64,000 nucleotides of DNA, taken from contig CDPCPM010000387.1 of assembly GCA_976551045.1 (NCBI GenBank), positions 620,001-684,000 on the forward strand, read 5' to 3'. Below the pieces are notes generated by a model. The model was not told the DNA's origin and searched no databases. It worked only from the letters and a program-made list of their open reading frames with translations. The translations under genes were made by a program, and so were the position numbers. Source of the stretch: Glaucostegus cemiculus (taxonomy: Eukaryota). Positions 2,495-44,905 of this stretch are shown in pieces (the first letter of the stretch is position 1; each line of letters opens with the position of its first letter).

Positions 2495-3307
2495 CGGGAG
2501 CAAAGTGCAAGAAGGCTAGCCTAGGAAGACATTCCACTGAAAAATCCACTGGAAATCCAGGGACCTCCCGAAAACCAGGGCTTCTAAATAAGGATGATTT
2601 TGAAAGACTTGAAATTACTAATCCTAACAAGGGTGGAAAACGTGGCAACAAAGATGGAGACTGCAGCCCAAGCCCTAAAAAAAAGAAGCTGGAACAATTC
2701 TTCAAAAGCAGCCACGACTTGCCTGTTGACACTCCAAGAGAAAAGCTCTGTTGTCCAGTTTCTGGTCGGGGTCCATATGAGCATGTATGTTCTATGAAGC
2801 AAGCTAGCAATCTTCATATAACTACCTCATCTCCTGTACCTCAAAGGTCTCAGTTTGTAGGCCGCAGTGGACAGGAACATGAAATCAGTAAATTGAATAC
2901 AGCACAAACAAAATATTCATCACCAATGGACAATCGAATTCCTGCTCGACAAAGGCTCAAGCATCAAGAGGGAGACACTTTCAACAGGCCAGGAACTTCC
3001 TCACAACAAAGTACTCTGTCTCAATCAAGCACCAGAGGTGAGATAGACTTCAGGTCCCAACAAAAAGTTAATGAAAAGCATTTAAGTTCTGGTTTTCTCC
3101 AAACAATGGACTCTGGGTTCCTTCAAAATACTGAAGAAAACAGCAGCGCTTTGCCACCAGAAAATTCAGGTGGGCGGCATGGGGCTGTGGCTGAGGAAGA
3201 TCTTCCAAAAAGCCAGCCCACATCGTACTGTCCAAATTGTGTAATACTACAAGAGAAAATTCGACAGCTCCAGGAGGAACTAGATCGATTGAAGTCTAAC
3301 TTGCCAG
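2495..3307 (+). CDS. PRDM11: PRDM11 internal coding exon (penultimate exon of the long isoform): NLS, linker, CPNC motif and coiled coil
   Basis: Acceptor catttcAG|cg at 2493-2494 and donor ccaG|GTaagt after 3307; 813 nt, open, phase 1 to phase 1. Translation contains GDCSPSPKKKKLEQFFK and PTSYCPNCVILQEKIRQLQEELDRLKS, matching recalled human PRDM11 segments (…PQAKKKKIDLIFK… and …[27 protein letters not shown]…). The track ORF 2719-3405 is part of this exon plus intron read-through. Confidence 0.9.
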
Positions 3308-3720
3308 GTAAGTCTACACATATGATGTGCCCTATCAAATTAGTGGTTCATATGCTTGTTTTTGCACTTTATTGTTGGGTTTCAAAGCTGTGGCTGGCAG
3401 TTTAACCAACCTATCCACTGTGGTTTTCATATTGTTTGTGAGGTGATATAGCTCACCCATAGGAAAATTATGCTGCTTTTTGTGGACAATGCTGGCCTGC
3501 TGATTGATCCAAGGAATAGCATTAGTGTTGCATAGCCATAGTTCTTATAAAGGGGGATGTGACCTGTTTAGATGTGTTGAATGGGGAAGAGTTGGAATGG
3601 GAGAGAAGAAGAGGACAGTGGGGAATTCAATCTATATTAGAAAGAAAGAGACAGTATCCTGTTTGTTGGCCTGCATAGGCTGTATTTTAAACCAATGCTT
3701 CCTTCACAGATTATCTTAAG

Positions 3721-18200: not shown

Positions 18201-19178
18201 TGTTATGCAGGATTTCTCTTTATTAGCTTCTGATTCTGTGTATATCCGGGCATCGTGGGGTTTGATTGAATGCTTTGTCTTTACAATAGAATGAAGATTA
18301 CAGGAATAATATTATTTAAAGATTATAGGGATTATAGAGAGATGTGAATGATTTTATTTTTATTAAGCGTCTAAGATAAAATCAGTTTATCATGATACAT
18401 TCAGTAACTTTAAGACTTTAACCAGCAATAAAGTTTAATGTTTTTTTTTGTGCTGACTTTTTTTTGCTACAGTTTTTAACACCTCTTTTGACCACTGTGT
18501 GCTATTCTTGATGAAGCCTGAATGGTACCGTGCTTAAGAATATGTAAATAATACCCAGGTTTTGAGAATGAGATACTTCATTTTATAATTAGCTAATTGG
18601 TTTGTGTTAATTTAGATGGTCATGATAGGTAATACATACACACGGCCACTTTTTGCATTTTATTCCCTGTTAAAATGTTGATCTATTTAGTAAGGTGATT
18701 AGTATTTTTTTATTTGGAAATTGAAAAAGCCAGATAGAAGTACTTAGTACTGTCAGTAGATTCAAAGTAGAAACGTAATATTAGACTGGGCTACTCCCAT
18801 GTGATTAGAAAGAATTGTGCACAAGAAAGATGACCTTGAAATGAACATTGAATAAAGATGTATTGCCATACTTCAGATGTTACTTTGGGAAGGGTAGATG
18901 ATGTACTTGCTCCCTTAAGAAAAAGAATAATAATTTTACATGTTTTCTTTCTTTACAAAAAAAATGTTTTTCTTCTCAAATACAGCCTATGTGTTCCAAC
19001 AAAAGATACTGTCTTCCCTGTGCAATTGACTAAGAAATACTCTTTGTAATAAGTAATAAGTAATCTTTACAAAAGTTAGCAGTGTAATTTTAAAATCTTG
19101 TTTCTCATAGTTTGACAGCAATTTTTAAACAAGTATTTGTTAAGTTTGATGCAGTTAACCTATGTTTTATTTTTTAAG

Positions 19179-20272
19179 TTCCTTCTATGGCTACATTTGC
19201 CTTTCTGGAAAATCTTGTCCAGTACTACAGATTCCATCTCTTGCAATCAGAAGCCGAAGAAAGAAGCACCTTGATACCTGTGCGACCTGACCAACAACAG
19301 CAACCTATGAAGGATAAGGTTCAACACAATTACCCTCAACATCCACCAAAACTGCTACACCTTCCACAACAGTATGAAAGTCAACATCCAGATGAACAAA
19401 TGACAGTGATTGAGCAGGTTTCAGAACCTAAACTGACGCAACAGAAGTCTTCAGAGCAAGAACTTAAAGTTGAGCAATGTGATGAAATTCTCGAACAACA
19501 ATATTATCCAGAGCGATCAAAACACCATTACCAGCAGAAAAACCTCAAAGAACAACTCAGTGAGGTGCCACAAAATAACAGCCAATGCCAACAGCATTTA
19601 ATGGTGGAGCACCATCCACTAGATGCCAATCAGTTGTCACATCTCCAGCAACAGTCACCACAACCGTTATCACATCTCCAGCAAAAGTCTCCACATCAAT
19701 TGTCACATCTCCAGCAACAGTCGCCACAGCAGTTATCACATCTCCAGCAAAAGTCTCCACACCAGTTGCCACATCTCCAACAACAACCGCCACAGCAGTT
19801 ATCACATCTCCAGCAACAGTCGCCACAACAGTTGCCACATCTCCAGCAACAGTCGCCACAACAGTTGCCACACCTCCAGCAACAGTCGCCACAACAGTTG
19901 CCACATCTCCAGCAACAGTCGCCACAACAGTTGCCACATCTCCAGCAACAGTCGCCACAACAGTTGCCACATCTCCAGCAACAATCACCTCACCAATTAT
20001 CACAGACGCAGCAGTCATCCCCACATCCACTGCCACAATCCCAGCAGCAACAACCTGACCAAAAGGCATTTTTATGGCAGCAAGAAAATCTACAGCCATT
20101 GCCACCACCACCAACGTCACAACCACAGCATCAGCTTCCTCATTATCAATGCCCTTCACTGCAGGAACCTCCACATCTCCAACATAAGTTGCAGCCTTCA
20201 ACTTTCAAAGATATTTGTCGTAATCTGAAAGCAGTAGCTGCTCGTAAACGTATGCGGCAGAATCAGCCATCG
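19179..20272 (+). CDS. Putative alternative exon A of the PRDM11 locus: Q/P/H-rich low-complexity region with 11-aa repeats
   Basis: Acceptor tatgttttattttttaAG|tt at 19177-19178; phase 1 matches the 3307 donor (…[17 protein letters not shown]…). 1094 nt open; donor ccatcg|GTaaga after 20272, phase 0. Corresponds to track ORF 19187-20290. Confidence 0.8.
19631..20059 (+). repeat. Coding 33-bp minisatellite: 11 good and 2 degenerate copies of ([11 protein letters not shown])
   Basis: Unit cagttgccacatctccagcaacagtcgccacaa read directly; copies 7-10 are almost identical. Confidence 0.97.
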
Positions 20273-20661
20273 GTAAGAACTATCACTTGATACAATGATT
20301 CTTTATATTGATTGGCTAGTTTTATTCGGATGAGGATGAATCAAATGAAAAGTGCTGTTTACCAACTTGAAATTGTTATATGTATAATTACTATGAATGA
20401 GAATCCAAATGATAAAATTGTTTTCTCAGAAAAGATATAAGGCTGTGACAATTAATTATCATCTGTGCATGCATGGATATGAATAAGTGAAAGATGTTGA
20501 GACCACCTGACCAACTTTAGTTATGTAAAGAGGTGTCAGAAGCTATAATTGCTCTCCTTAGAACAGAGAAGGGTAAGGGGGTATTCAATGGAGATGTTGA
20601 AAGTTGAGGTGCTTTCAGAGCACAGTTGAAAAAAACTTTCTATTAATAGTTGGGATGGTAA

Positions 20662-20979
20662 CTAGAACATAGAACATAGAAAAAACGCAGCACAATTCAG
20701 GCCCTTCTGCCCACAAAGCTGTGCCGAACATGTCCCTACACTAGAAATTACTGGGCATTCCATAGCCTTCTATTTTACTTCACTCCATGTACCTGTCTAA
20801 CAGTCTTTTGAAAGACCCTATTGTATCCGCCTCCACCACTGCTTCTGGCAGCCTATTCCACGCACTCACCACTCTCTGAGTAAAAAACTTTCCCCTGACA
20901 TCTCCTCTATATCTACTCCCCAGCACCTTAAACCTATGTCCTCTTATGGCCACCATTTCAGCCCTGGGGAAAAGCTAGA
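20662..20979 (-). mobile_element. Young 5'-truncated CR1 3' end with CTAGA TSD, nested in an older + strand CR1 fragment (about 20540-21245)
   Basis: (AGAACAT)n tail at 20664-20680; CTAGA at 20662-20666 and 20975-20979; removing the insert restores ggtaactagagggtataaatttaatgtgattggc. Confidence 0.85.
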
Positions 20980-21685
20980 GGGTATAAATTTAATGTGATT
21001 GGCAAATGGACCTCTGCAAGTGTAGCATGGTGAAGGGGGGTAGGGATGGTGATGAGAAATATTTTGCTCTGTCAGTTATAAAGATTGTGAATTTTTTGCA
21101 AGAGAAAGGCAGATCTAGATTCAATTATAACTTTCAAAATGAAATTGCCTATATATTTGTGAAAGAGATTTTCATGTTTATGGGAAAAGAGCTGGTAGCT
21201 TCACGATAAATTGGGTGCTTTCTGTGCTCTTTGATTCTATGATTTAAATACAATAGATCGAATAGACCTGGGACTTAAACGGTGTCAGGAAAGTATTCTA
21301 AAAGTTATCACTATGAAATGTCAAGCCATATTAAATTCAAATTAATGGATTAAATTAATTAAAAGAAATAAATTCTACAAAAGGCTTAACATGCATTTTA
21401 ATATCAACTTGGTCTTGAGCACTCACTACTGCTCAATGATTGTGCCAATAATATTGAAGCAAGGCACATTGACCAAAAAATATCAGGTTTGAGACTTCAG
21501 TGGCTAATCTGGGGTACTGGATGTGCTGCTTAAATTACCACGTGGACTGCCATGGTTCCATGAAAGTGATTCAGCTACACTATATACCAAGGATAATTAA
21601 GGAAAGTAATGGCCCATGCTTCTGAAGAATCAAAAAAATAAGCCACAAACTCTCTAATAGAGAATGGGTATACCCAGTACAACTA

Positions 21686-21699
21686 CCACTAGAGGGCAG
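21686..21699 (+). promoter_or_regulatory. CTCF consensus motif
   Basis: CCACTAGAGGGCAG matches the core consensus CCASYAGRKGGCRS at every position. Confidence 0.55.
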
Positions 21700-23202
21700 T
21701 CAGTGATTTTGTTGGACTTGTATTGCCTATAGTTGAAGCCCAGTGTAGGAGCAGAGTAAGGTCCTGTTACTTGAAGAAACTTGTAATGACATAGTCTCTA
21801 AGGCCATATTGTTAATAATGCTCTTTTAAGTAAGATACCAAGGAAGAGATGGGTGCATCAGTGTTTATGGAACCATATTTTTTGTATGATACGCTTTTCA
21901 GGAAGTGTGGCTGAAAGAAGAAAATAGGGAATTGACTAGAAACTTGTGCACAGCAGGTCACAAAGGATTAGATTTAAATAGTGATCAAAATAATTATTAG
22001 GGAATACAGATGGAAGTAAAAATAATCAAGGCTTTTAATTGTTTTTAGCCTCCCTGAAACAGTTTTCTTTGGCATGTTGATGTTAAGAACTATCTGGTCT
22101 TGAACTTAACTCTTTGAGGGATGCAATAATATCTTAACATTTTAGAAAATGAGACTGAAAGATGAGAGAGGAGAATACCAGGTGTACAAGAATGTGGAAA
22201 GAAGAATAGCTTTGAATAAAGAGCAATTTAGAGATCATAAGGATCAGACATGGGATAATACAAGGCAGATGAGTTTAGAGTCTGAGGCCTAGGAAATATA
22301 AGTACACTATGTGCATGGTGTGCCAATCACCATTTGTTCTTGGACCCACTGTTGCAAACCAGGTCTAAGGTGCAACTGGTCTGGTGTTGTGCTTTTCCTT
22401 TTAGTACTGTGGAACCTGTGAAGGAAAAATAAGAGAGTTCAGGAAAGGAAGTTTTAAAGGAAATTCATAATTTAAACAGTGCAGATAAGTAAAATAAGCC
22501 CATTACTTCAAAGCAATCCAAAAAAGTTAACATAAGGGGCGTAACAGATCTTAATAAATAGTTAATGCAAAACAGATATCTAGAGGAACATGTTTGCTCA
22601 AATCATAAATGCTTGTAATTGTCTGAGAAGATAGAATGTCTAAAAAATGTTTAAGTTAATACAGTAGTGGAATTGAGTTTTGTTTTGTTCCATTAACACA
22701 AAATTCTAGCAATTGATTTGTTCTTCAAAGGGATGAATATTGATTGACCATTCGGCCGTATTTCATCTCTGACTTTTTTGGGGATTGTTTCTTAATCATG
22801 AGTTCAGATTTCTGACTTTTCATTTTTAATTTCATTTTCTTCTTCACTCTTTTTAACAGCTGCACTGCCATCAGTCCATGTCATTATCAGGAAAACAAAG
22901 CTTTCAGAACAGGGAGCAAGGGAGTTAAAATTTTTAGATTTCAAGACTTAAAATCTGGGAGGAGTTGATGAGAATGTGGGAACATAAATGGAATTATTAC
23001 AGGATTGGTGTAAGTGGGTGGTTGATGGTGGGTGCAGACTTTGTTGGATGATATCTCTGTATGACTCTATGACAAAAGTTATTGCCAATGCATGTATCAA
23101 GTCACCCCTTGATGGAGATTTTATATATTCCTTTTAATCACTGCATGTTATTGGTAATAAATACAAGCTTCTGGCTGGGTCTGTTGCTTTACATTTGGGT
23201 AT

Positions 23203-23285
23203 TGTTAGTTACCTATACCAGTCTTTGTTTAGTTACCTGGTAACTGGTTAGTTACCTATACCAGTTACCTATACCTATACCTAGT
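23203..23285. repeat. Short irregular tandem repeat (agttacctatacc)
   Basis: ttagttacctataccagt recurs, with partial copies, four times. Confidence 0.75.
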
Positions 23286-23479
23286 GGTTTGTTAATCTCA
23301 CACGAAAACAGATCCGAAGTGTGGACAAAAGGAAAGCAGCTAATGAGGTAATCATCATTCATCTGAGGTGATTGTGCAGGTGGGAGAAGTGCTGGCCACA
23401 TTTAATAGGGCACAGAAGTAGAATTAAATAGAGGTGTACAGTGGGAAAACATCCAGGAATTCTGCATCTGTCCCAATCT

Positions 23480-24125
23480 GCCCATGGTCATTCTGGTGTG
23501 AGTGTGCACTCAGGTTGTGATGCATCAGATTAAGGTAATTAGTTTCTGAGGAAACACAGAAAGCCAGCACACAAGTGTAGCAGATAATAGGGAAGACTAA
23601 TGGCTAATGTTAGTCCTTATTTCAAGGGGGTTGGAGTATAAAGATGGAGAAGTCTTACTGCAACTGCCAAAGGTGCTAGTAAGACCATATCTAGAATACT
23701 GTGAACAATTTTTGTCCCCAAACTTAAAGAAAGATATTTCATTGGAGGTGGTGTAAAGAAGATTCACTGGCATGATCCCGAGTGTAAAGGGGTTGTCCTA
23801 AAAGGAAAGGTTAAGTGCTTGGGACTTTACTCATTGGAATTGAGAAGTATGAGAGGTGATCTTATTGAAACATCTTAGGGGGCTAGATGGGATAAAAGTT
23901 GAGAAGATGTTTCTCTCTAGAGTGCCGTGAGTCTTTGGAACAGAGAGCTGTGGGGCAAAGTCCTTTTGTATACTTAAGGCTGAGATATATTTCTAATCAG
24001 TAAAGTAATCAAAGGTTATAGGTAAAAGGCAAGAAAGCGGATGAGAATTCTTTTGAATGGCAGAGCAGATATGAGAGGCTGAATGGCTACTTCTCTTCCT
24101 ACTTCTTAGTCTCTTGTGGTCTTAA
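23480..24125 (+). mobile_element. CR1 LINE ORF2 3' fragment
   Basis: Decayed GLEYKDGEVLLQL..VLVRPYLEYCEQF..P and LYSLELRSMRGDLIET motifs; CR1 tail …ggctgaatggctacttctcttcctacttctt. Confidence 0.85.
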
Positions 24126-24578
24126 AGATTTCAATATACATTTTAATAAAGTGCTTCCTTATGTCATGGTTTTGGATCTACCGGAGGCATTACCATGTCC
24201 CTCAAGTCAGCGTGCATTTTTATTTCAGGGTCACAGAAGCTATAATGTCTCTGGCAGAATGTAGTAGACTGTTTTTGTAAGTCCCTCTGACAATGGCAGT
24301 AGTGAGGAGGGAGCAATAGACTCTGCAGTGGAATCGGAAATCCAACACTGGGGATTTATTCTCCAAATTGTAGCTGCAGGGTTATGTTAGCACAGCAAAA
24401 ATTTGTGCCATTGGCTCATTTGTCTCATACTCCAACATGCACACTATTTAGTTTGCATGTCCTTAAGAAATAATTGAAATTTGTTAAGGTACAGCCTGGT
24501 TGGACTTATGTAATTAAGTGCACATTTTTGTTTCTATATACTGTGTTCTATAATGTTTCTTGTTGTTTGTATTAAAAG

Positions 24579-24801
24579 GAAGGTGTACAGCCTGGCTCTG
24601 GGATTTCGGTCAGCTGCCTTAATTTAAATTTCATAAGTCCTGCTGAGAGGAGTGACCCAAGCAAACTTACAAGAGCTCTGCTGGAATACTTTTACACTGA
24701 ACAACATCTGGCTTCACATTGTGCTCGAGGCAAAGGCAAAAACAGTGGGTTCAACATGTCCAGACCAGCTCTTGATCCAGATGTTGTGGATGCAATCAAA
24801 G
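24579..24801 (+). CDS. Putative alternative exon B: N-terminal two-thirds of a BEN domain (not in the ORF track)
   Basis: Acceptor tttcttgttgtttgtattaaaAG|gaa at 24577-24578, phase 0; 223 nt open; donor aaaG|GTacac after 24801, phase 1. Manual translation: EGVQPGSGISVSCLNLNFISPAERSDPSKLTRALLEYFYTEQHLASHCARGKGKNSGFNMSRPALDPDVVDAIK, carrying the BEN hallmarks (helix LL..F..E.LA, G.GK loop, PALDP..V..IK). Confidence 0.85.
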
Positions 24802-25799
24802 GTACACTACACCTCATTTATCTAAAATGTCAGTCATGGTCATTTGTATAATGAAGCCACAAGGATTACTGAAGTAGCTAAGGGACAGTTTCAGTTTATT
24901 TAGTTAGTTACTTGCCTGCTTGATCTGTAGGTACTTCAAACTAATGTTTGTTCCCAAATATAAAAAAGATATTTCTAGAAAGTTCATTTGCTGACTTTGC
25001 CTATATATTTAAAATAGAATTAAAAATGTTAAAATGGAATAAGATTGAGAATACATCTCCAAAAAAAACAGCATATGCCGCTACTACCATTTTCATAACA
25101 GTGGGTGGGATGACAGTTCATTTGGGAGCTATTTATATTTAAGAACTGAACTCAGGAAATCTGATGCTGAATTAGAGACAGGCTGAAGTGCTTTTAGAAC
25201 TTGAAAGAATAGGAATCCTCCATTTGGCCCCTCTTTGGCCTCGCTCCTGCCACAATTCTTCAACCAAGCTTTTTCACAGTCACCTTTCACTGCTGGACTC
25301 TCTTGCCTTTCTCCACCAAACCTTGAACCTAAACCTGACCTTGCCTTTCTGATTGATGAGTTTGACTCCACCCATTAGGCTGTGATCTCTCCAAGTCGCC
25401 GCCTGTGGCCTCCTGTAGCTAGTTTTAAGGCAGATAGTGGCAAGTAATGGCACAAGAAAATTATGAAGTTCCATAAAATTTTAGAGCAGGGCTTCTGTGT
25501 CCCTGGGATTTCCACTTTCTTACCTGCCTCAAGAACAGTGTTCCACTACTCCCTCCTTGCCTTAAATAATGCCATAGTGTGGATAACTATAAATATAATA
25601 TCCCAAAGCCACAGGAATTGTAAAATTGTATTTACCCTCAGGAGAGTGAAAAAAGTACCAATGCAAGTGAACTACAACAGTGGCATTTCAGTATTTTCAT
25701 AAACCCGTAATCGATTTTAATTTAGTGGAAGGATTTGGATTGTAGGATTCTATGACTTGGAACTAACCAATAGAGAGCTACTTAATTGAAGCAGATGAT

Positions 25800-26310
25800 T
25801 TTAGAACATAACAAATAAAAGCAGAAGAGGGCCATGTGTCCTCTGAAGACTTTGCTGTTCAATATCAGTTCCATATTCCCTTCTGATTTCCTTGAATCAC
25901 TTCGTGACCAAAAAGATATTGATCCTATCACAAATAGACATTATAACTATGTATTCACAGACCTGTGATGTGGAGAATTTTAATGATTTACAAGCCGCTG
26001 AGAAATTTCTCCATGTCTCGGTGCTTTATCCCGAGACATCTAAACTCTCCAGGTTGAGGAAGCAATCTTTCAGCATATATCGTGAATCCCATCAGCATCT
26101 TGTAGGTTTGAATGAGGTCACCTTTCATTCACAGTTCATGATTATAAACTACAGGGAGTAAAGGTCTAAATTACTTAGTCTCTCCTCAGAACAACCTGCT
26201 CATCGTAGGAATACTATAATGTACAGTGAAAAGCAAGTATATATTCCTCTGGTACAGAGACACAAACTACATATGGTACTCCGTGAGCAGTCTCATCAAA
26301 ACCCTGTAAT
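25800..26310 (-). mobile_element. CR1 LINE 3' fragment
   Basis: Same family pattern as 9268-10020 (tagaacataac…aaagcagaagagggcc…, gtggagaatt…, gagaaatttctcc…). Confidence 0.65.
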
Positions 26311-28374
26311 TACCCCGGGTTGCACAACCTCTTGAGGCCCCCAATTTTTTTCTTTCTTACAGCAATATATTCAAATTATTTTAAGGACTTTTGTAGAAAG
26401 TTCACAATAGGGAGGTCACATAGAAGCACAAGGATAGGAGGTGCATGGAAATGACATTGCCTTAACCTTGCAGTCTGCATAATCATATTGGTAAATGGAA
26501 AGAAATGACAGACTGGTGCATAGTAGGTTGTTCTTCCTTGATTGAACTTGATCAACACTGTTAATGTGTAATAAAGAAAATTTATTCTGAATTTGGCCTT
26601 GCTGTCCTCTGAGAAAGGAATGCCTAATAGTTACATTTCTCTTTGAAATAGATATCTTCCCATTCTGAGCATAACATTCTTTCACCTTGAAACAAAGAGA
26701 AAAACTGTTAATGTTGGAAATCTGGAATAAAATCAATAAATAATAAAAATACACAGAAGTTTAGAATCTAAGGAGCTAATGCTTTTGCGCATGAGTCATT
26801 AGAAAATGAAATGTGCAGCAGCTATTTTTCAGTGCTACAGGATCTGAAATCAACTTTACCTTGTACTTGTTATCATTTCCAGATGACAGTTGTCCCTCTA
26901 ACCTATTTTGGTCATTCCTTGCTATACCACTCTCTGATTTAGTGCTGTGGGATGTCAAACACAATAACATAAGTAGTCATCATTATCTTCCTTCTCTACT
27001 TCCTCCATTGTTCCCTTGAATTCCTCCATCTGCTGCATTTCCTCCTGCTCTGTATTCTGCTGTTGGGGTGAGGGAAAAACAGAAGATGGGAGAAGGAGGC
27101 GGTTCTTCTCATACACTGCAAAGACAAAACAGAAGCTGTGCCCAAAACAATTTTCTGGTTATCCAGCAGCACACGTTCTAATGATGATGTATACTATTGA
27201 TCAATACAAACGGAATACAGTAATCACAATCAAATATTGTTAGTGATATGTGCTGAATTTCATAAAGCCCCCCATTCAAGCAGTGGTGTGCAGCCTGGTG
27301 AGGCACTGCACTTGAGGGCACCTCTTCCTTCCTTCCTGTCCATCACTGCTTTAGCCCAAGTGCAGATGAGGGACCTTTAATTGCTTAAACCCTGTGTGTA
27401 TGTGGGGGTGGGGGGGGATGGAGAGGAGGGTAGTGGGGGAAGATCGAGAGAGAAGATTGCCATTGCTGCTGTGAGGGTGGAAGATGGTGTAGGAGAGGGT
27501 GGATATGTGGATTCAGTGAGAGTTTTTACATTTGTGTGTCCATGTGTGTATTTCTTTTAATGGTATTATGCTCCCCTTGATGTATATTGTAAGGTCATGA
27601 AATTTCTTCCCACACTGCTCCTTTGAGCAGGAATCGTCACACCTGGAGGTGACAATGCAGACCACCTCCTGCAAGACTAATGGTGGTCCTGGGGGCAGGT
27701 CTCCTGGCCTCCTAAATGCATAAGACTTCATGACTGACATGTATTTCAGTTATGATTACTGCCTCTCCCCTGCTGCCTCTCTCTTCTCTGGAAGCTTTTT
27801 AGCCTATGTTATTGCTTCCCTGCTGCCATGGAGATTGTGCTCTTCTTCATTTGCTGTACAGCAGTGTGTCAGGAGCTCTGCTGAACTTAACCTTGTCTCT
27901 GTCAAGTGCAAGCCGTATCTTTGTGTGTATAGTGTAATCACACACTCGTTTATAATTAATTTCAAGTTTTTTTGAGGCAGACCCAATTTGGCACCAGTAT
28001 TCAATGCAGTGATGTTTAATATGGCAAAAATAGGTGCAAACCAATTTCTGAACAATTTCTAAGTATGAAATTTCAGAATTTTTGGTTTGCTTTCCTGAAA
28101 TTTTCTTTTTTAGCTTCACAAAACAATAAGTTACTGGGGGGTTACCGTGGTGAGATACGGTGGAAACTTTGATCATATTTTAATCCCATTTAATTCTGTA
28201 AGGCGCCTCCATACTCGAATGTGGAGTTATTGAATAAATGTTTTCGTTCATACTTAGTGCAGTTCTTGGGATATCTGGACTCAAGATACAATATTAAGAC
28301 TGAAGTATCATGGTCAAGTAATCCTACTGAAGATTATCCATCAAATTTATATTTCTCCATTTTGTATTTTACAG

Positions 28375-28511
28375 CATATGTGCAGCTGAAGTTTGCATAC
28401 GTGATGGACAAGGCATTTTATGCCATGGTAAACAGCAAGTGCAGTGACAGCAGAAAAAAGATTCGTTACATTTTGGGAGTCCGGGACAAACCTGAAGATG
28501 CTCCTAAGTAG
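28375..28511 (+). CDS. Putative alternative terminal exon C: C-terminal helices of the BEN domain and stop codon
   Basis: Acceptor tttctccattttgtattttacAG|ca at 28373-28374; phase 1 matches the 24801 donor. Gives AYVQLKFAYVMDKAFYAMVNSKCSDSRKKIRYILGVRDKPEDAPK* with TAG at 28509-28511. (V/I)NSKC..SR is the typical BEN terminal helix (compare BANP IDSKCRTAWR). Confidence 0.85.
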
Positions 28512-28864: not shown

Positions 28865-28870
28865 AATAAA
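28865..28870 (+). terminator. Candidate poly(A) signal of the BEN isoform
   Basis: First AATAAA after the TAG at 28511; a TGTA element lies upstream (~28795) and a T/GT-rich tract (tttgttctttatttgtg) about 12-30 nt downstream. Confidence 0.55.
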
Positions 28871-40200: not shown

Positions 40201-42722
40201 TTACAACTTTTTCTCAGTCTGATCGATTAAGGTTACTTGTCTGTTCACACAAGTCTTGTCTGTTCAGGGCGCCATGCTTTTCTTTGGATTGTTGATTGCT
40301 GGGCACTTACTGCGCAGAATGAAAGGCCATGGGCAAATAGAAATCCAATGGTTTATGATGTTCATTTCCCACTCTGCAAAATCTAACCCAGTACCTTGCA
40401 TAGTTTGGTTTGTTTTGCATCAGAATTAGAGTTCAGTGTTCTTTTGCATATGTTTTTAATTCTTATCGATAAAATAAAAGTCTTGTACAATGACTTGTGA
40501 TACTTTTTCTGTCTGAAGAAAAGTGTAATCTTTACTTGTTTCATTGCTTGACGCTATTTTTCTTATACTACTGACAATGAAACTGTTGCAGTCATTCACA
40601 TAAATAAATTTTTAAAACCCTAGATTTGCAATTATGCTTTGTTTCCTTAGTTGGCTCCCTGACAACAGCTGTCTCTAGGTTCCCTTAATATTTTTGCTGG
40701 TGTTTTGTTTTGAATTGGTATGTTCCTCCCTACAGATCATTAGATGGAGGTTGCTCGACTTTTGTATTTCTTCCACTTACTGTTTCCATTCACACTCATG
40801 ACGAGAAAATAATCTTTGCATACAAATGAATCAAGATCATAATCAATACATTTGCTAAATTATTAGATGAAGTGAATCCTGGTGTAATACCAGTTCATTC
40901 AATGGGGATACCAGAGGATTTTTCAGTATCACTTGTAGAATTGATATGTATATGGCAAAACAGAAGATGTAATGAGCTGTTCACTGATTAAGAAATATTT
41001 GTAACACTTCAGCAGGTCAACAAATGTTATCTCCCTCTCATAAAATCCTCATGTATGTATGTTTTCCCTTGTATGTGTGAATAATGTGTTAGTGTTACCT
41101 ATTACACTGTTCATTTTGTTTGTACGTTTGTGCCTTAAACACTGAGTGAGGTTTTAAGGTATACAGCATAATATTGACTGTACTATGACACAAAATAAAA
41201 GGATTTTGTAATAGAAGGGTTTTAACAGATGGATGTTATTTATTTTCTCTGCATGTACTCTTTGTATTTTATCTGGCTGTGTAGTGATTATGTTACACAA
41301 ATGGTGTACAAAAGAGATAAGTGACAAATCATATTCTAGGATTTGAATGTTCAGTTGCAATAAAACAAAATACATTATATTTTGTATTTGTTATAGATGA
41401 TGGTAATCTAATATTTTAATTTTAGGTTTTTAAATCTCAGAGCATTAGTTGAATCTGCTTGTGTTGGTATAAATTGTTAATGTACATGTGTATTAAGAAT
41501 TTATAATAATTTGGGGACCTGCAGCAAAAAGCATTATATGTAGTTGCATTGAGATGTGTTTTCTGTAGATTATATTTGTATAAAGTTGTTTTACTTTGGT
41601 GAAGCAGTTTTAAAATAGATTTAGTCTCATAGCATATGTCACCATAGCAAAAGGAGTGGTTGTCTTCCTTGAAGGATTGCTTTGAAGGAATAATGGTCTT
41701 CATAGAATTAATGAGGTTGTTTCACCATCTGAAAAGTTTTAACACTTTCCACACTATTTAATAATGTTAAACTGTTATTTTCAATTGGTTAGATAATTTA
41801 ACTTCTTTAAACCTTCTCTAAACTGTAAAGTTGTGCAATGTCAAACAAACTTTGGCTTTCAGAATGGCTAAGAACTTCAAGATATGTTTCTGGGTTGGAA
41901 TGGTTTCAGAGTTTCAACAGTAAATACATTATTATCGAAAAAAAGAAAATAACAATTTGTTCTGCCAATACAGGCTTATGTTTACCTATCAGAAATGCAG
42001 TAATCAATGGCACCCAGTGGTATTTATGCAAAGTGTGAGGGTAACTTAAGGTGTCTTAGAAGATACATAGTTAAACTCAAATATCCATAAGTTGCCCGAG
42101 TTGCTTTGTGGAAATGGCATCTTGCTTTCTGACTTATCATTGGCATGCATCGAATGGCATGAAGTTGATGTAATTTCCCAGTAGGTATTCACTAAACTCA
42201 TACAGCAAGTTAATTATGGTCCCTTCTAGGCTAAGTACTCTTTTAGTGACATAATTAATGTTAATTACTGCTAACCAACTTCACTGGCACTAAATATTAA
42301 TGATTCCCAGTTCAGAGTCTAAATTTGTAGATTTAAAAAATATGATTTTAATGTTTTATAAATCCTTTCCATTTCTCACCCTTAATCCATTCTCTCTCTT
42401 TCTCTTCATTTCTTTTAAATCCAATTTGAAATTGAATTAATTCACTATGTTATAACTTCTTCTTAGTCCTTACACGGTTCTTTGCATAATCTTTCAGCTT
42501 GATTGATCCTAAATGCTGTTTCCCTCGCTGCAACATTGTCAGCTTATGTTTTCAGTAAGAGAAATTTAAAACCAAATCAGCAAGACTTAGTTTAATTAAT
42601 AGTAGACTGGATTGATTCCCTCCTACAGCAAAATATGATCCAGTATGATTGTGATTAGATATAAGAAAAAAGAAGTTAAACTTTCAGGTTCTGAACATTT
42701 TTTTTCTTTTTCCTCATCCTAG

Positions 42723-44905
42723 CTCAAGAAGGACAGACTCCTGTCCCAGTTGTCATGGATGACACAAGTGAGCAGGAGATGGATTCAGCTGATGAGTCGA
42801 TGTCCAATGAGATGCTGGCTACAACAGATGAAATATCGAAAATATCGACTGGTACAGGCCGGAGGATCAGACGCTTCAAGCATGAGTGGCTGAAAAAGTT
42901 CTGGTTCCTGCGCTATTCACCCACCCTAAATGAAATGTGGTGCCATGTTTGTAGGCAGTACACTGTTCAGTCCTCCAGGACATCAGCCTTCATCTTAGGT
43001 TCTAAGCAGTTCAAAATCCACACTATCAAACTTCATGCCCAGAGTAATCTTCATAAGAAGTGTTTGCAGCTTTATAAGCTGAGGATGCATCCAGAAAAAA
43101 CAGAAGAGATGTGCCGGAACATGACACTGTTGTTTAACGTAGCTTATCACATAGCTTTTGAAGGAAGGCATTTTTCAGATTTCAGACCATTGGCTGAACT
43201 GCTGAAAAAATGTGACTTAAAGATTGTTGACCAATACTTGAACGAGGGAGACTGTCAAACATTAATTCATCACATTGCAATGTCTCTTCGTGAGGACCTC
43301 TTTGAGAGGCTCAGGGTGTCCCCATTTATGAGTGTGATTTTGGATGGGCAAACGGATGACTTGGTTGCTGATAATGTTGCTATCTACATTCAGTACATAA
43401 CTAATGAAGGGCCAGCTGCTACAGAGTTATTGTGCCTACAGGAATTGAGCTCTGCAACAGTGGATGGTTATACTCAGGCACTGGACAGAGCCCTTGGGGG
43501 CATAGGGATCAAATGGAAAGAGGAAAAGTTAATTGTCGGGCTGGGGGTGGATGGAGCCAATATGACAACAGGACTAAGGGCAGGTTTAGCCATGAAGATC
43601 AAAAAAGCTTTGCCTTGGCTACTCTCTGTCCCATGTGTGATACATAGGCCTCACCTGGAAGTATTGGATGCTATTAGTAATAAGGAACTAACCTGTTTGG
43701 AAGAACTAGAGAATAACTTAAAACAATTGCTGAGTTTTTATCGTTATTCCCCCAAACTTATGTGTGAACTAAGAGCCACTGCAGCAACACTCTGCGAGGA
43801 GACAGAATTCCTTGGTGACATTCGAGCTGTCAGGTGGATCATTGGAGAACAGAATGTCTTGAATGCATTGATCAAGGATTACTTGGAAGTGATAGCTCAT
43901 CTTAAAGATGTTAGTGGTCAGGCCCACAAAGCAGATTCTGCTGCCATTGCTTTGGCTCTGCTGCAATTCCTGATGGACTATCAGTCAGTTAAACTTATCT
44001 ATTTTCTGTTAGATGTCATTGCTGTACTCACGCGGCTGGCATTCATTTTCCAGGGTGATCACCTTCTGATTACCCATGCGGATGACAAGATTGAAGAAGC
44101 CATTGAAGAAATAAGTAGATTGGTGGAATCGCCAGGAGAGTATTTACAAGAGTTTGAGGAGACCTTTCATGAAAACTTTCATGGTGTTCCTCTGAAAAAC
44201 TTAAGAGTAGCAGAAGCCAAGTTTAATTCAATAAGAGAGAAAATTTGCCAAAAAACTCAACTCATTCTAGCTCAAAGGCTGGATTGCAATAGCCGCACAA
44301 TTATTAGAGCATGTCAAGTGTTTGATGTTGCTACATGGCCCCAAAATGAGGAAAACCTGATGAGTCATGGGGAAGAAGAAATTATGCACATATATAAGCA
44401 CTTTGAAATAATTCCATCTTTTACAAAGGAAATCGGACTGGATGGCAGAGACATTCGGGGTAGTTTATTGCAGGAATGGAGAGAGCTCAAGTCTGAGTGT
44501 TACAACAAGAATGGTTTCAAGGAGTTGAGCCGTCACATTTTTAAGTATAAACAAAGATTCCCTATACTAAATAGGATCATTCAAATATTGCTTGTTCTGC
44601 CAACTTCAACAGCAGCCTGTGAGAAGAGTCGTGGTGCCTTTTACCGGATTCGTAACAATAACAGGTCTCGACTTAGTCTTGACCAACTCAATGATCTTCT
44701 GACTATTGCTGTTAATGGACCATCCATTGCAAATTTTGAGGCAAAGAGGGCACTGGACTGTTGGTTTGAGGAGAAGTCAGGAAACAGATATTCTTTGTCG
44801 CCAGAGATGTTAAGCAGAGTTACTTCACTGGATCAGAAACCAACATTACATGGCCTAGACGTGGGAACTGATTGTCTAACGGATATTCATGAAACCATAA
44901 TGTAA
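42723..44905 (+). CDS. PRDM11: PRDM11 terminal exon of the long isoform: TTF-type zinc finger plus domesticated hAT transposase-like (ZNF862-like) domain
   Basis: Strong acceptor tttttttctttttcctcatcctAG|ct at 42721-42722; phase 1 matches the 3307 donor (A-QEGQTPVPVV-MDD…). The 716-aa uninterrupted ORF is near-identical in long stretches to recalled vertebrate PRDM11 (EWLKKFWFLRYSPTLNEMWCHVCRQYTVQSSRTSAF; LEELENNLKQLLSFYRYSP; WFEEKSGN). Stop TAA at 44903-44905. Confidence 0.96.

What the first reader, a model, noticed from the sequence alone, without database searches (positions are those of the whole stretch)
19179..28511. Hidden three-exon BEN-domain cassette in the last PRDM11 intron: a predicted PR/SET-coiled-coil-Q-rich-BEN isoform
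Seen: exons 19179-20272, 24579-24801 and 28375-28511 all have AG/GT boundaries with pyrimidine-rich acceptors. Their phases chain exactly (1, 0, 1) from the PRDM11 donor at 3307, adding 484 codons with no stop until TAG 28509. The B+C junction assembles SDPSKLTRALLEYFYTEQHLASHCARGKGKNSGFNMSRPALDPDVVDAIK|AYVQLKFAYVMDKAFYAMVNSKCSDSRKKIR. Established: this has the motif layout of BEN domains (BANP, NACC1, BEND family, Drosophila Insensitive), which bind DNA sequence-specifically through the terminal helix. PRDM11 is the PRDM member lacking the C2H2 zinc-finger array. Inference: in this lineage PRDM11 can acquire a DNA-targeting BEN module, a PR/SET+BEN architecture I do not know from mammalian PRDM11. 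The domain is invisible in the ORF track because it is split over two small exons.
Basis: partly seen in the sequence, partly recalled or inferred. Interest (0 to 1): 0.92.

Follow-up and report, generated by a model that had tools for sequence, protein, structure and literature searches.

The report
Shark-ray PRDM11 alternative BEN-domain ending
The three exons are real and give the chromatin regulator PRDM11 an alternative tail ending in a BEN domain that is almost unchanged between sharks and rays, but public gene models already contain this isoform, so it is unstudied rather than undiscovered.

Summary
Exons 19179-20272, 24579-24801 and 28375-28511 have AG/GT borders, and their phases chain from the PRDM11 donor at 3307 to TAG 28509-28511. 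Exon B alone passes Pfam's BEN cut-off (25.5 bits against 23.2; profile 1-45 of 76).

RefSeq models in at least 15 shark and ray species carry PR/SET + Q-rich + BEN. The closest, P0014 (971 aa), is 100% identical to exons B and C. In Mobula birostris the BEN model and the hAT-ending model share 518 identical N-terminal residues, then split exactly as the window predicts (3307>19179 or 3307>42723).

Stranded RNA reads cover exons A and B, not the unique intron, and show joint 20272>24579. Joints 3307>19179 and 24801>28375 were not seen directly.

The BEN core is 97.9% identical between rays and sharks, above the PR domain (92.8%). The folded BEN region matched five solved BEN domains first (Z 10.0-7.4, then 5.1).

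No bony-vertebrate or chimaera protein matched exon B. Six paper searches involving PRDM11, PRDM or BEN found no description. DNA binding is inferred, not tested.

The parts
2495..3307 (+). PRDM11 middle coding exon, phase 1 in and phase 1 out (813 nt). It ends ...YCPNCVILQEKIRQLQEELDRLKSNLP + g. The donor GT is at 3308-3309.
   Evidence: Sequence, translation. It is 98.1% identical over 269 aa to P0014 residues 252-520. Some RefSeq isoforms skip it, for example P0002 and the 976-aa hAT forms.
19179..20272 (+). Cassette exon A. The split codon g|tt gives V, followed by 364 codons: a helical N-terminal part, a Q/P/H-rich repeat region, and a basic tail ...[15 protein letters not shown].
   Evidence: It is 82.7-84.9% identical to ray models and 54-73% to shark models. 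RNA reads on one strand reach depth up to 4.3. For the 21 listed differences between reads and window, pN/pS is about 0.28.
19631..19983 (+). A 33-bp tandem repeat of 10.7 copies inside exon A, encoding an 11-residue Q/P-rich unit.
   Evidence: The exon A equivalent varies from 311 to 478 aa among 15 models.
24579..24801 (+). Cassette exon B: a linker plus the first part of the BEN domain (Pfam profile 1-45 of 76). It ends in phase 1.
   Evidence: 25.5 bits, cut-off 23.2. It is 100% identical to five ray models and 94.6-98.6% to the other ten models. Joint 20272>24579 is seen in 4 reads of X7 and one X1 contig.
28375..28511 (+). Cassette exon C: the split codon g|ca gives A, followed by 44 codons and TAG (28509-28511). 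It holds the last BEN helices, including the invariant ...NSKCSDSRKK... segment.
   Evidence: It is 100% identical to P0014 residues 928-971. In P0001 the BEN match runs to profile position 72. An X1 contig runs 327 nt past the exon B donor without lying on intron 24802-24950. This is indirect, because exon C itself was outside the stretch laid.
28865..28870 (+). First AATAAA after the stop, about 355 nt downstream. It is a candidate polyadenylation signal for the cassette's own 3' end.
   Evidence: Read in the sequence. Use of the site was not tested.
42723..44905 (+). Alternative, pan-vertebrate last coding exon of PRDM11. The acceptor AG is at 42721-42722, phase 1; g|ct gives A, then QEGQTPVPVVMDD... 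It is a domesticated hAT transposase part (zf-C17orf113 + Dimer_Tnp_hAT).
   Evidence: One search gives 94-97% identity to elasmobranch, 83% to Callorhinchus and 74-75% to turtle, bird and marsupial PRDM11. The junction text matches P0027 '...LKSNLPAQEGQTPVPV'.

Best explanation
The three exons are an alternative 3'-terminal cassette of elasmobranch PRDM11.

How the two isoforms arise:
- The phase-1 donor at 3307 (or the phase-1 donor of the exon before, when the symmetric middle exon 2495-3307 is skipped) can splice to 19179. The transcript then runs A>B>C to its own stop and a nearby AATAAA.
- This gives a protein with PR/SET, a middle region, a Q-rich repeat and a BEN domain.
- Alternatively the donor splices to 42723, giving the usual PR/SET + hAT-derived isoform.
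- The two ends exclude each other because exon C ends in a stop codon.

What is shown: the exon structure, the BEN family and fold membership, transcription and the A>B splice in a close relative's RNA, very strong purifying selection on the BEN exons, and public models with a shared N-terminus.

What is inferred:
- The BEN domain tethers the PR/SET module to specific DNA sequences. The invariant basic C-terminal segment in exon C would read the major groove, as in BEND3-BD4 and Insv.
- The Q-rich repeat acts as a flexible or activation-type linker.
- RKRMR acts as a nuclear signal.
For: Structure in the window:
- Borders, phases and the stop codon are as described.
- Exon B alone hits BEN at 25.5 bits against a cut-off of 23.2.
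- P0014's last 119 residues equal the window's exon-wise translations plus the split-codon A. It hits BEN at 32.0 bits, E 1.4e-7, profile 1-72 of 76.

Public models:
- One search found 4 proteins at E<=0.001 among 1,835,955,588. The top two are PR/SET proteins of 1009 and 679 aa with exon B at 100% and 97% identity.
- In one search all 12 of 12 hits (167 candidates) carry PR, SET and BEN, and all are sharks or rays.
- adds two Mobula species and Hemitrygon.
- In one search the Mobula birostris BEN and hAT models share 518 identical residues, then read VPSMATF... and AQEGQTPVPV... These are the two junctions predicted from 3307. Seven of the eight other pairs share a 249-428-aa prefix. The ninth pair (P0012/P0020) has different N-termini and shares only 1 residue.

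RNA:
- Exon A and B reads all lie on one mate orientation, which fits + strand RNA.
- Depth is zero in the unique intron bins.
- Joint 20271>24578 is GT..AG (cut +1), with 4 reads from 4 starts in X7 and one 822-nt X1 contig.

Selection and fold:
- Ray-versus-shark mean identity is 0.979 for the BEN core, 0.928 for PR and 0.52-0.75 for exon A. In the B+C region 100 of 119 columns are invariant in 14 species.
- The top five of 48,161 chains are all BEN domains: 4x0g Z 10.0, 7yul 9.6, 8yzs 9.0, 7yuk 8.8 and 5jno 7.4. The next chain scores 5.1.
- In BEND3-BD4 the base-reading residues cluster at the BEN C-terminus (passages of PMC8887127).
Against: - No read across 3307>19179 was seen. It could not be seen in a stretch of 6,000 letters or fewer. 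No loose-end row for 19179 appeared among those shown (107 rows were not shown).
- Bin 19000-19198 has mean depth 1.37 (X5) and 0.66 (X7). That is more than reads clipped at 19179 could give, so a few reads run upstream of the acceptor. They could be unspliced RNA or a start inside the intron.
- Joint A>B was seen in X7 and X1 only, with 0 reads in X5 and X6. Depth is low everywhere (4.3 or less).
- The reads differ from the window by about 2-3% in exon A, so they come from a divergent individual or close relative, not necessarily the window's own organism.
- RefSeq models are automatic, and I could not see their supporting evidence.
- The AlphaFold model is poor overall: mean pLDDT 35.5, the PR domain did not fold, and the BEN region scored 64-82.
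- Some BEN domains bind proteins rather than DNA, for example BEND3-BD1 (5jno; PMC8887127 passages). No DNA-binding test was possible.
Confidence: 0.8

Rival explanations
1. The cassette is mainly a separate nested transcript. It would start in the PRDM11 intron just upstream of 19179 and be translated from ATG 19187, giving a stand-alone Q-rich + BEN protein of about 480 aa. On this reading the PR/SET-BEN models are over-joined by the annotation pipeline.
For: - An ATG lies 8 nt into exon A.
- Read depth in bin 19000-19198 (1.37 in X5, 0.66 in X7) implies some reads upstream of the acceptor, while other unique intron bins are at 0.
- No junction read to 3307 was seen.
Against: - That Met is present in only 8 of 15 models. 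It is V or L in 7 sharks, and the next Met is not conserved, lying at offsets 35-272.
- The residues before it (V from the split codon, then P and S) are kept in all 15 models.
- The acceptor phase fits both upstream donors.
- admitted candidates of 373-1188 aa, so a protein of about 480 aa would have been eligible. All 12 hits carry PR/SET.
- Two different upstream exons are joined to exon A in the models, '...SNLP|V' and '...NLLT|V'.
Confidence: 0.1
2. The isoform is real, but its BEN domain is a protein-protein interaction module or a co-repressor adaptor, not a sequence-specific DNA reader.
For: - BEND3-BD1 (5jno) binds the PICH TPR domain, and it is one of the five top structural matches at Z 7.4 (PMC8887127 passages).
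- No DNA-binding assay exists for this protein.
Against: - The four best structural matches are all DNA complexes: 4x0g, 7yul, 8yzs and 7yuk, Z 10.0-8.8.
- The C-terminal segment is basic, invariant in 14 species and shared with the Mytilus relative. This is where BEND3-BD4 reads bases.
Confidence: 0.15
3. The cassette is low-level splicing noise or a decaying remnant without function.
For: RNA depth is low, at 4.3 or less.
Against: - The BEN core is 97.9% identical between rays and sharks, higher than the PR domain.
- The frame is open in 15 species.
- pN/pS is about 0.28 even in the fast-evolving exon A.
Confidence: 0.02

Closest known systems
RefSeq PR/SET-BEN models of elasmobranch PRDM11: P0014 = Pristis pectinata LOC127577722, P0001 = XP_059831429.1 Hypanus sabinus, P0005/P0006 = Mobula prdm11 isoform X2, P0002 = XP_043562185.1 Chiloscyllium plagiosum isoform X8
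   Same: They have the same exons in the same order and with the same junction residues. Exons B and C are 100% identical to P0014, and the middle exon is 98.1% identical. Domain content is PRDM2_PR/SET + BEN.
   Different: Exon A differs in repeat number and is about 83% identical. The models are automatic and named 'uncharacterized'. The papers I searched do not discuss them.
Canonical long PRDM11 (PR/SET + hAT-derived C-terminus) of jawed vertebrates
   Same: It is the same gene with the same N-terminal exons. The same phase-1 donor feeds its last exon, at 42723-44905 in the window.
   Different: Its C-terminal module is a domesticated hAT part (zf-C17orf113 + Dimer_Tnp_hAT), not Q-rich + BEN. 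It is found from chimaera to marsupials. The BEN form was found only in sharks and rays.
BEN-domain DNA-binding factors with solved structures: Bsg25A/Elba1 4x0g, BEND6 7yul, NACC1 8yzs, BANP 7yuk, BEND3
   Same: They share the all-helical BEN fold (Z 10.0-8.8, 89-97 residues aligned), a Pfam BEN match above cut-off, and a basic C-terminal segment.
   Different: Sequence identity to the solved chains is only 16-22%. Their partner domains are none (the fly BEN-solo factor Bsg25A) or BTB in NACC1, never PR/SET. None of them reached E<=0.001 with exon B as query.
Mytilus HTH_psq + BEN proteins: P0004 = VDI43391.1, and P0138
   Same: These are the closest BEN sequences outside elasmobranchs. P0004 is 42% identical to exon B and shares the ...NSKCSDSRK... 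segment.
   Different: They are invertebrate proteins with a Psq helix-turn-helix (P0004) or zinc fingers (P0138) in front, and no PR/SET. Whether they share a recent origin with the cassette is unknown.

Membership tests
BEN domain (Pfam PF10523) | A match to the family profile above the curated gathering score. | tested here: met
   Exon B alone scores 25.5 bits against 23.2. P0014, whose last 119 residues equal the window's exon-wise translations, scores 32.0 bits over profile 1-72 of 76. P0001 scores 35.5 bits.
BEN domain (Pfam PF10523) | An all-alpha fold like solved BEN domains. | tested here: met
   The model of P0002 has BEN-region pLDDT of 64-82. The top five of 48,161 chains are BEN domains, Z 10.0-7.4, and the next scores 5.1. 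Caveat: the whole model has a mean pLDDT of 35.5.
BEN domain (Pfam PF10523) | Sequence-specific DNA binding through the C-terminal helix or loop. | not testable with these tools
   Only indirect support exists: an invariant basic C-terminal segment in the position where BEND3-BD4 reads bases (PMC8887127 passages).
PRDM11 (PR/SET domain 11) | A PR/SET domain of the PRDM type in the same gene. | tested here: met
   The PR exons lie upstream of the window. The window's middle exon is 98.1% identical to P0014 residues 252-520. P0014 has PRDM2_PR at E 4.2e-39.
PRDM11 (PR/SET domain 11) | The hAT-derived long C-terminal exon shared by vertebrate PRDM11. | tested here: met
   The ORF 42755-44905 carries zf-C17orf113 and Dimer_Tnp_hAT. 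It is 74-97% identical to proteins named PR domain-containing protein 11.
PRDM11 (PR/SET domain 11) | No C2H2 zinc-finger array. | tested here: met
   There were no zf-C2H2 hits in P0001, P0002, P0014, P0029, P0038 or P0095, nor in the precomputed lists.
Alternative last exons (mutually exclusive 3' ends) | One donor, two acceptors of the same phase, and each end with its own stop codon. | tested here: met
   The donor at 3307 is phase 1, and acceptors 19179 and 42723 are both phase 1. The stops are at 28509 and 44903-44905. An AATAAA lies at 28865.
Alternative last exons (mutually exclusive 3' ends) | Both spliced forms seen as RNA from one gene. | tested here: inconclusive
   Model pairs share N-termini in 8 of 9 pairs compared. 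Reads show only the A>B joint.

The most novel reading that the evidence does not exclude
Elasmobranch PRDM11 may be a single PR/SET scaffold that chooses, by alternative last exons, between two different DNA-targeting tails. One is the domesticated hAT transposase part shared by all jawed vertebrates. The other is a BEN module found only in sharks and rays. The nearest sequence relatives of that BEN module are bivalve Psq-BEN proteins. This would mean a BEN gene, possibly of mobile-element origin, was captured into the last intron in the elasmobranch stem and then frozen at about 98% identity. It would give PRDM11 a sequence-specific reader that other vertebrates lack.
Probability: 0.3. Interest if true: 0.6.

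Novelty: already known. Interest (0 to 1): 0.4.

Why it matters
PRDM11 is the family member without a zinc-finger array, and how it finds its targets is unclear. In mouse lymphoma models it represses Fos and Jun (passages of the review PMC7177584).

Sharks and rays keep an isoform that ends in a BEN domain, and this domain is better conserved than the PR domain itself. That offers a natural experiment for asking what a PR/SET module does when tethered by a different DNA reader. The BEN region can be expressed and its motif determined directly.

It also shows that automatic annotation already holds an unstudied domain architecture (PR/SET + BEN). Six paper searches involving PRDM11, PRDM or BEN found no description of it, so the gap is in study, not in discovery.

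Tried and rejected
Steps that led nowhere:
- Exon C alone gave no BEN hit. It is too short on its own.
- A PDB sequence search with exon B gave only a weak BEND6 match (7yul, E 0.061).
- The search for relatives of the Mytilus BEN found 2 proteins among 17 candidates, both from Mytilus, so the origin of the BEN stays open.
- The full-length AlphaFold model of P0002, built with a 17-row alignment, was poor (mean pLDDT 35.5). Only the BEN region was usable.
- Paper search was badly framed (min_terms 2) and returned irrelevant fish papers.
- Pfam on six other window ORFs found nothing above cut-off.
- The search of earlier findings was not open, so no earlier findings were used.

Steps I could not do:
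- I could not test chimaera, gar, coelacanth or tetrapod genomes for unannotated BEN exons, because no vertebrate genome collection is on hand.
- dN/dS across species was not possible because I had no orthologous DNA. I used protein identity by segment and the differences between reads and window instead.
- The 'coiled coil' was not tested.
- Supplements of the PRDM evolution papers (for example PMC5519329) were closed. They may list shark PRDM11 domain content.

Database protein P0014, whose C-terminus equals the exon-wise translations, stands in for it.

Full report
**1. What is in the sequence**

- Exon A is 19179-20272, with AG at 19177-19178 and GT at 20273-20274.
- Exon B is 24579-24801.
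- Exon C is 28375-28511, ending in TAG at 28509-28511.
- The upstream donor is CCAG|GTAAGT after 3307.

The frames chain, taking each exon on its own.
- The g at 3307 plus tt gives V.
- Then come 364 codons, 74 codons plus one base, g+ca giving A, and 44 codons with a stop.
- The total is 484 residues.
- The in-frame codon just before the exon A acceptor is TAA.

The exon ending at 3307 begins at 2495, with AG at 2493-2494. It is phase 1 at both ends.

A second acceptor of the same phase lies at 42723, with AG at 42721-42722. It opens a 716-residue ORF running to 44905.

**2. What the parts are**

Pfam results:
- Exon B alone matches BEN at 25.5 bits against a curated cut-off of 23.2. The match covers profile positions 1-45 of 76 and ends at the exon border.
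- Exon C alone is too short to score.
- Exon A has no family. It holds a 33-bp tandem repeat of 10.7 copies.
- The 716-aa ORF carries zf-C17orf113 (E 4.8e-9) and the hAT dimerisation region (E 1.5e-6).

**3. The isoform already exists in public protein sets**

An exhaustive HMMER search with exon B over 1,835,955,588 representative proteins gave only 4 hits at E<=0.001.
- P0001: 1009 aa, 100% identical.
- P0002: 679 aa, 97% identical.
- P0003: a 54-aa fragment without a name.
- P0004: a 274-aa Mytilus protein, 42% identical.

- P0001 is XP_059831429.1 of Hypanus sabinus.
- Its cluster also holds 'prdm11 isoform X2' of Mobula hypostoma and Mobula birostris, and a Hemitrygon akajei protein.
- P0002 is 'prdm11 isoform X8' of Chiloscyllium plagiosum.

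Pfam finds PRDM2_PR (E 4e-40) and BEN (35.5 bits, profile 1-72) in P0001, and the same pair in P0002.

A second search used the C-terminal 140 residues of P0002 and admitted proteins of 373-1188 aa. It gave 12 hits among 167 candidates.
- All 12 carry PR, SET and BEN.
- All are sharks or rays, and they are 93-100% identical to the query.
- With, that makes at least 15 species.

The window is closest to P0014 (Pristis pectinata LOC127577722, 971 aa).
- The middle exon is 98.1% identical.
- Exon A is 82.7% identical, with a different repeat number.
- Exons B and C are 100% identical.

P0014 therefore stands in for the joined peptide I did not build. It scores BEN at 32.0 bits, E 1.4e-7, over residues 881-949.

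**4. One gene, two endings**

The 716-aa ORF finds PRDM11 long isoforms throughout jawed vertebrates. There were 726 hits at E<=1e-10 among 8000 scored candidates, and 120 were listed.
- Elasmobranchs are 94-97% identical. They are often named 'zinc finger protein 862 isoform' there.
- Callorhinchus is 83% identical.
- Turtles, crocodilians, birds and marsupials are 74-75% identical.

I compared BEN and hAT models of the same species in nine pairs.
- In Mobula birostris the two models share 518 identical residues up to '...LKSNLP'. They then read 'VPSMATF...' and 'AQEGQTPVPV...'. These are exactly the two products predicted from donor 3307 with acceptors 19179 and 42723.
- Seven further pairs share 249-428 residues.
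- One pair (P0012/P0020) has different N-termini.
- In Chiloscyllium plagiosum both endings follow '...NLLT', which means the middle exon is skipped.

**5. RNA**

No run on record as RNA holds the stretch. Three 2026 RNA runs of the same species label, plus contig runs, were offered. I laid X5, X6, X7 and X1 on 19000-24950.
- Reads on exons A and B lie in one mate orientation only (first mate on the minus strand). By the tool's note this fits RNA of the + strand.
- Depth is 0.2-4.3 on exon A and 0.5-4.2 on exon B.
- Unique intron bins are at 0.
- A high-copy repeat at 20592-20989 and a weak patch at 22781-23178 are covered on both orientations.
- Joint 20271>24578 is GT..AG, and with the cut one place to the right it is 20272>24579. 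It is seen in 4 reads from 4 starts in X7 and 0 reads in X5 and X6.
- The same joint is in one 822-nt contig of X1. That contig also runs 327 nt beyond 24801 without lying on 24802-24950, so the exon B donor is used.

Not seen: 24801>28375 directly, because exon C was outside the stretch, and 3307>19179, which is too far apart to lay together.

One unexplained point remains. Bin 19000-19198 has mean depth 1.37 (X5) and 0.66 (X7). Reads clipped at 19179 could not produce that much, so a few reads cross the acceptor.

The reads differ from the window.
- The 21 listed differences in exon A are 10 synonymous and 11 non-synonymous.
- With 222 synonymous and 870 non-synonymous sites, pN/pS is about 0.28.
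- All 11 non-synonymous differences give the residue that P0014 has.
- Exon B shows 0 differences in the X1 contig.

**6. Selection**

I aligned 14 BEN-isoform models. P0002 was left out because it lacks the middle exon. Mean identity between 7 rays and 7 sharks is:

| Segment | Mean identity |
|---|---|
| N-terminus | 0.816 |
| PR domain | 0.928 |
| Middle exon | 0.763 |
| Exon A, N-terminal part | 0.623 |
| Exon A, Q repeats | 0.519 |
| Exon A, C-terminal part | 0.746 |
| Exon B | 0.961 |
| Exon C | 0.891 |
| BEN core | 0.979 |

In the B+C region 100 of 119 columns are invariant. From memory, not from any call, sharks and rays split roughly 250-300 million years ago.

The Met at the start of exon A is present in 8 of 15 models and is V or L in 7 sharks. 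It is therefore not a conserved start codon, which argues against a stand-alone protein.

**7. Fold**

I ran AlphaFold2 on P0002 with a 17-row alignment.
- The model is poor overall, with mean pLDDT 35.5. Even the PR domain did not fold.
- The BEN region scores 64-82, with helices at 587-598, 601-607, 627-640 and 646-667.

Aligned to 48,161 solved chains, the top five are all BEN domains:
- 4x0g, Bsg25A with DNA: Z 10.0, rmsd 4.0, 97 residues aligned.
- 7yul, BEND6 with DNA: Z 9.6.
- 8yzs, NACC1 with DNA: Z 9.0.
- 7yuk, BANP with DNA: Z 8.8.
- 5jno, BEND3-BD1 with PICH: Z 7.4.
- The sixth chain scores Z 5.1.

**8. How it most likely works**

- Shown: an alternative last-exon cassette produces a PR/SET + Q-rich + BEN protein.
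- Inferred: the BEN domain binds specific DNA. Passages of PMC8887127 say that the base-reading residues of BEND3-BD4 cluster in the C-terminal segment, with helix alpha5 and the following loop lying in the major groove. They also say that Insv uses C-terminal and middle residues, and that BEND3-BD1 binds a protein instead.
- Here the matching C-terminal segment, encoded by exon C, is basic and invariant in 14 species. It is shared with the Mytilus relative.
- The roles of the Q-rich repeat and of RKRMR are guesses.

**9. What is in print**

- Six searches found no paper that links PRDM11 or any PRDM protein with a BEN domain in one protein. I judged the hits by the search listings only. A seventh search looked only for BEN structure papers.
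- One passage of PMC9392472 lists human PRDM11 as a putative Harbinger Myb-derived gene.
- Two passages of PMC5519329 place the origin of PRDM11 from PRDM9 before the split of cartilaginous and bony vertebrates.
- Six passages of the review PMC7177584 describe PRDM11 as a repressor of Fos and Jun and a lymphoma suppressor.
- Supplements were closed.

**10. Verdict**

The thing itself is already in RefSeq for at least 15 species, including a relative with identical BEN exons. The novelty claim therefore falls, although the biology is unstudied.

Within annotated proteins the cassette is limited to sharks and rays. None of the four Callorhinchus entries listed has BEN, but they are hAT forms. 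Unannotated exons in other genomes could not be checked.

Noticed in passing
window 20592-20989: A high-copy repeat sits in the intron between exons A and B. RNA reads of both orientations pile up there, to depths of up to about 260 in X7 and thousands in X1 contigs. There are many variant letters and loose ends at 20688 and 20975, so this is probably a transcribed interspersed element family.
   Followed up: no
window 19000-19198: Mean read depth is 1.37 (X5) and 0.66 (X7) in the bin that holds only 20 nt of exon A. A few reads must therefore extend upstream of the acceptor at 19179. They could be unspliced RNA or an intronic start, and this is unexplained.
   Followed up: partly
window 19631-19983: A 33-bp coding tandem repeat of 10.7 copies at 89% match lies in exon A. 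The exon A equivalent ranges from 311 to 478 aa among 15 species, so the repeat number changes quickly while the flanks are kept.
   Followed up: partly
window 2495-3307: The middle PRDM11 exon is symmetric (phase 1 in and out). Some public models of both the BEN and the hAT endings skip it, so at least four exon combinations are annotated.
   Followed up: partly
window 42723-44905: The usual last exon of PRDM11 is a domesticated hAT transposase part (zf-C17orf113 + Dimer_Tnp_hAT). It is 74-97% identical from sharks to marsupials. RefSeq names these shark isoforms 'zinc finger protein 862'.
   Followed up: yes
P0128 (Hirundo rustica PRDM11 isoform X4), residues 181-224: One bird model has a Myb_DNA-bind_5 match (E 4.2e-9) inserted so that the PR domain is split. 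This may be a model artefact. It may also relate to the remark in PMC9392472 that human PRDM11 could hold a Harbinger-derived Myb-like part.
   Followed up: no
window 19179-20272 against 24579-24801: The RNA reads and the X1 contig differ from the window at about 2-3% of exon A positions but at 0 of 224 positions in exon B. All 11 non-synonymous differences give the residue of P0014.
   Followed up: partly
window 22781-23178: There is weak RNA coverage on both orientations in the intron (depth up to about 1.6), along with X1 contig words. It looks like another repeat or a minor transcript.
   Followed up: no
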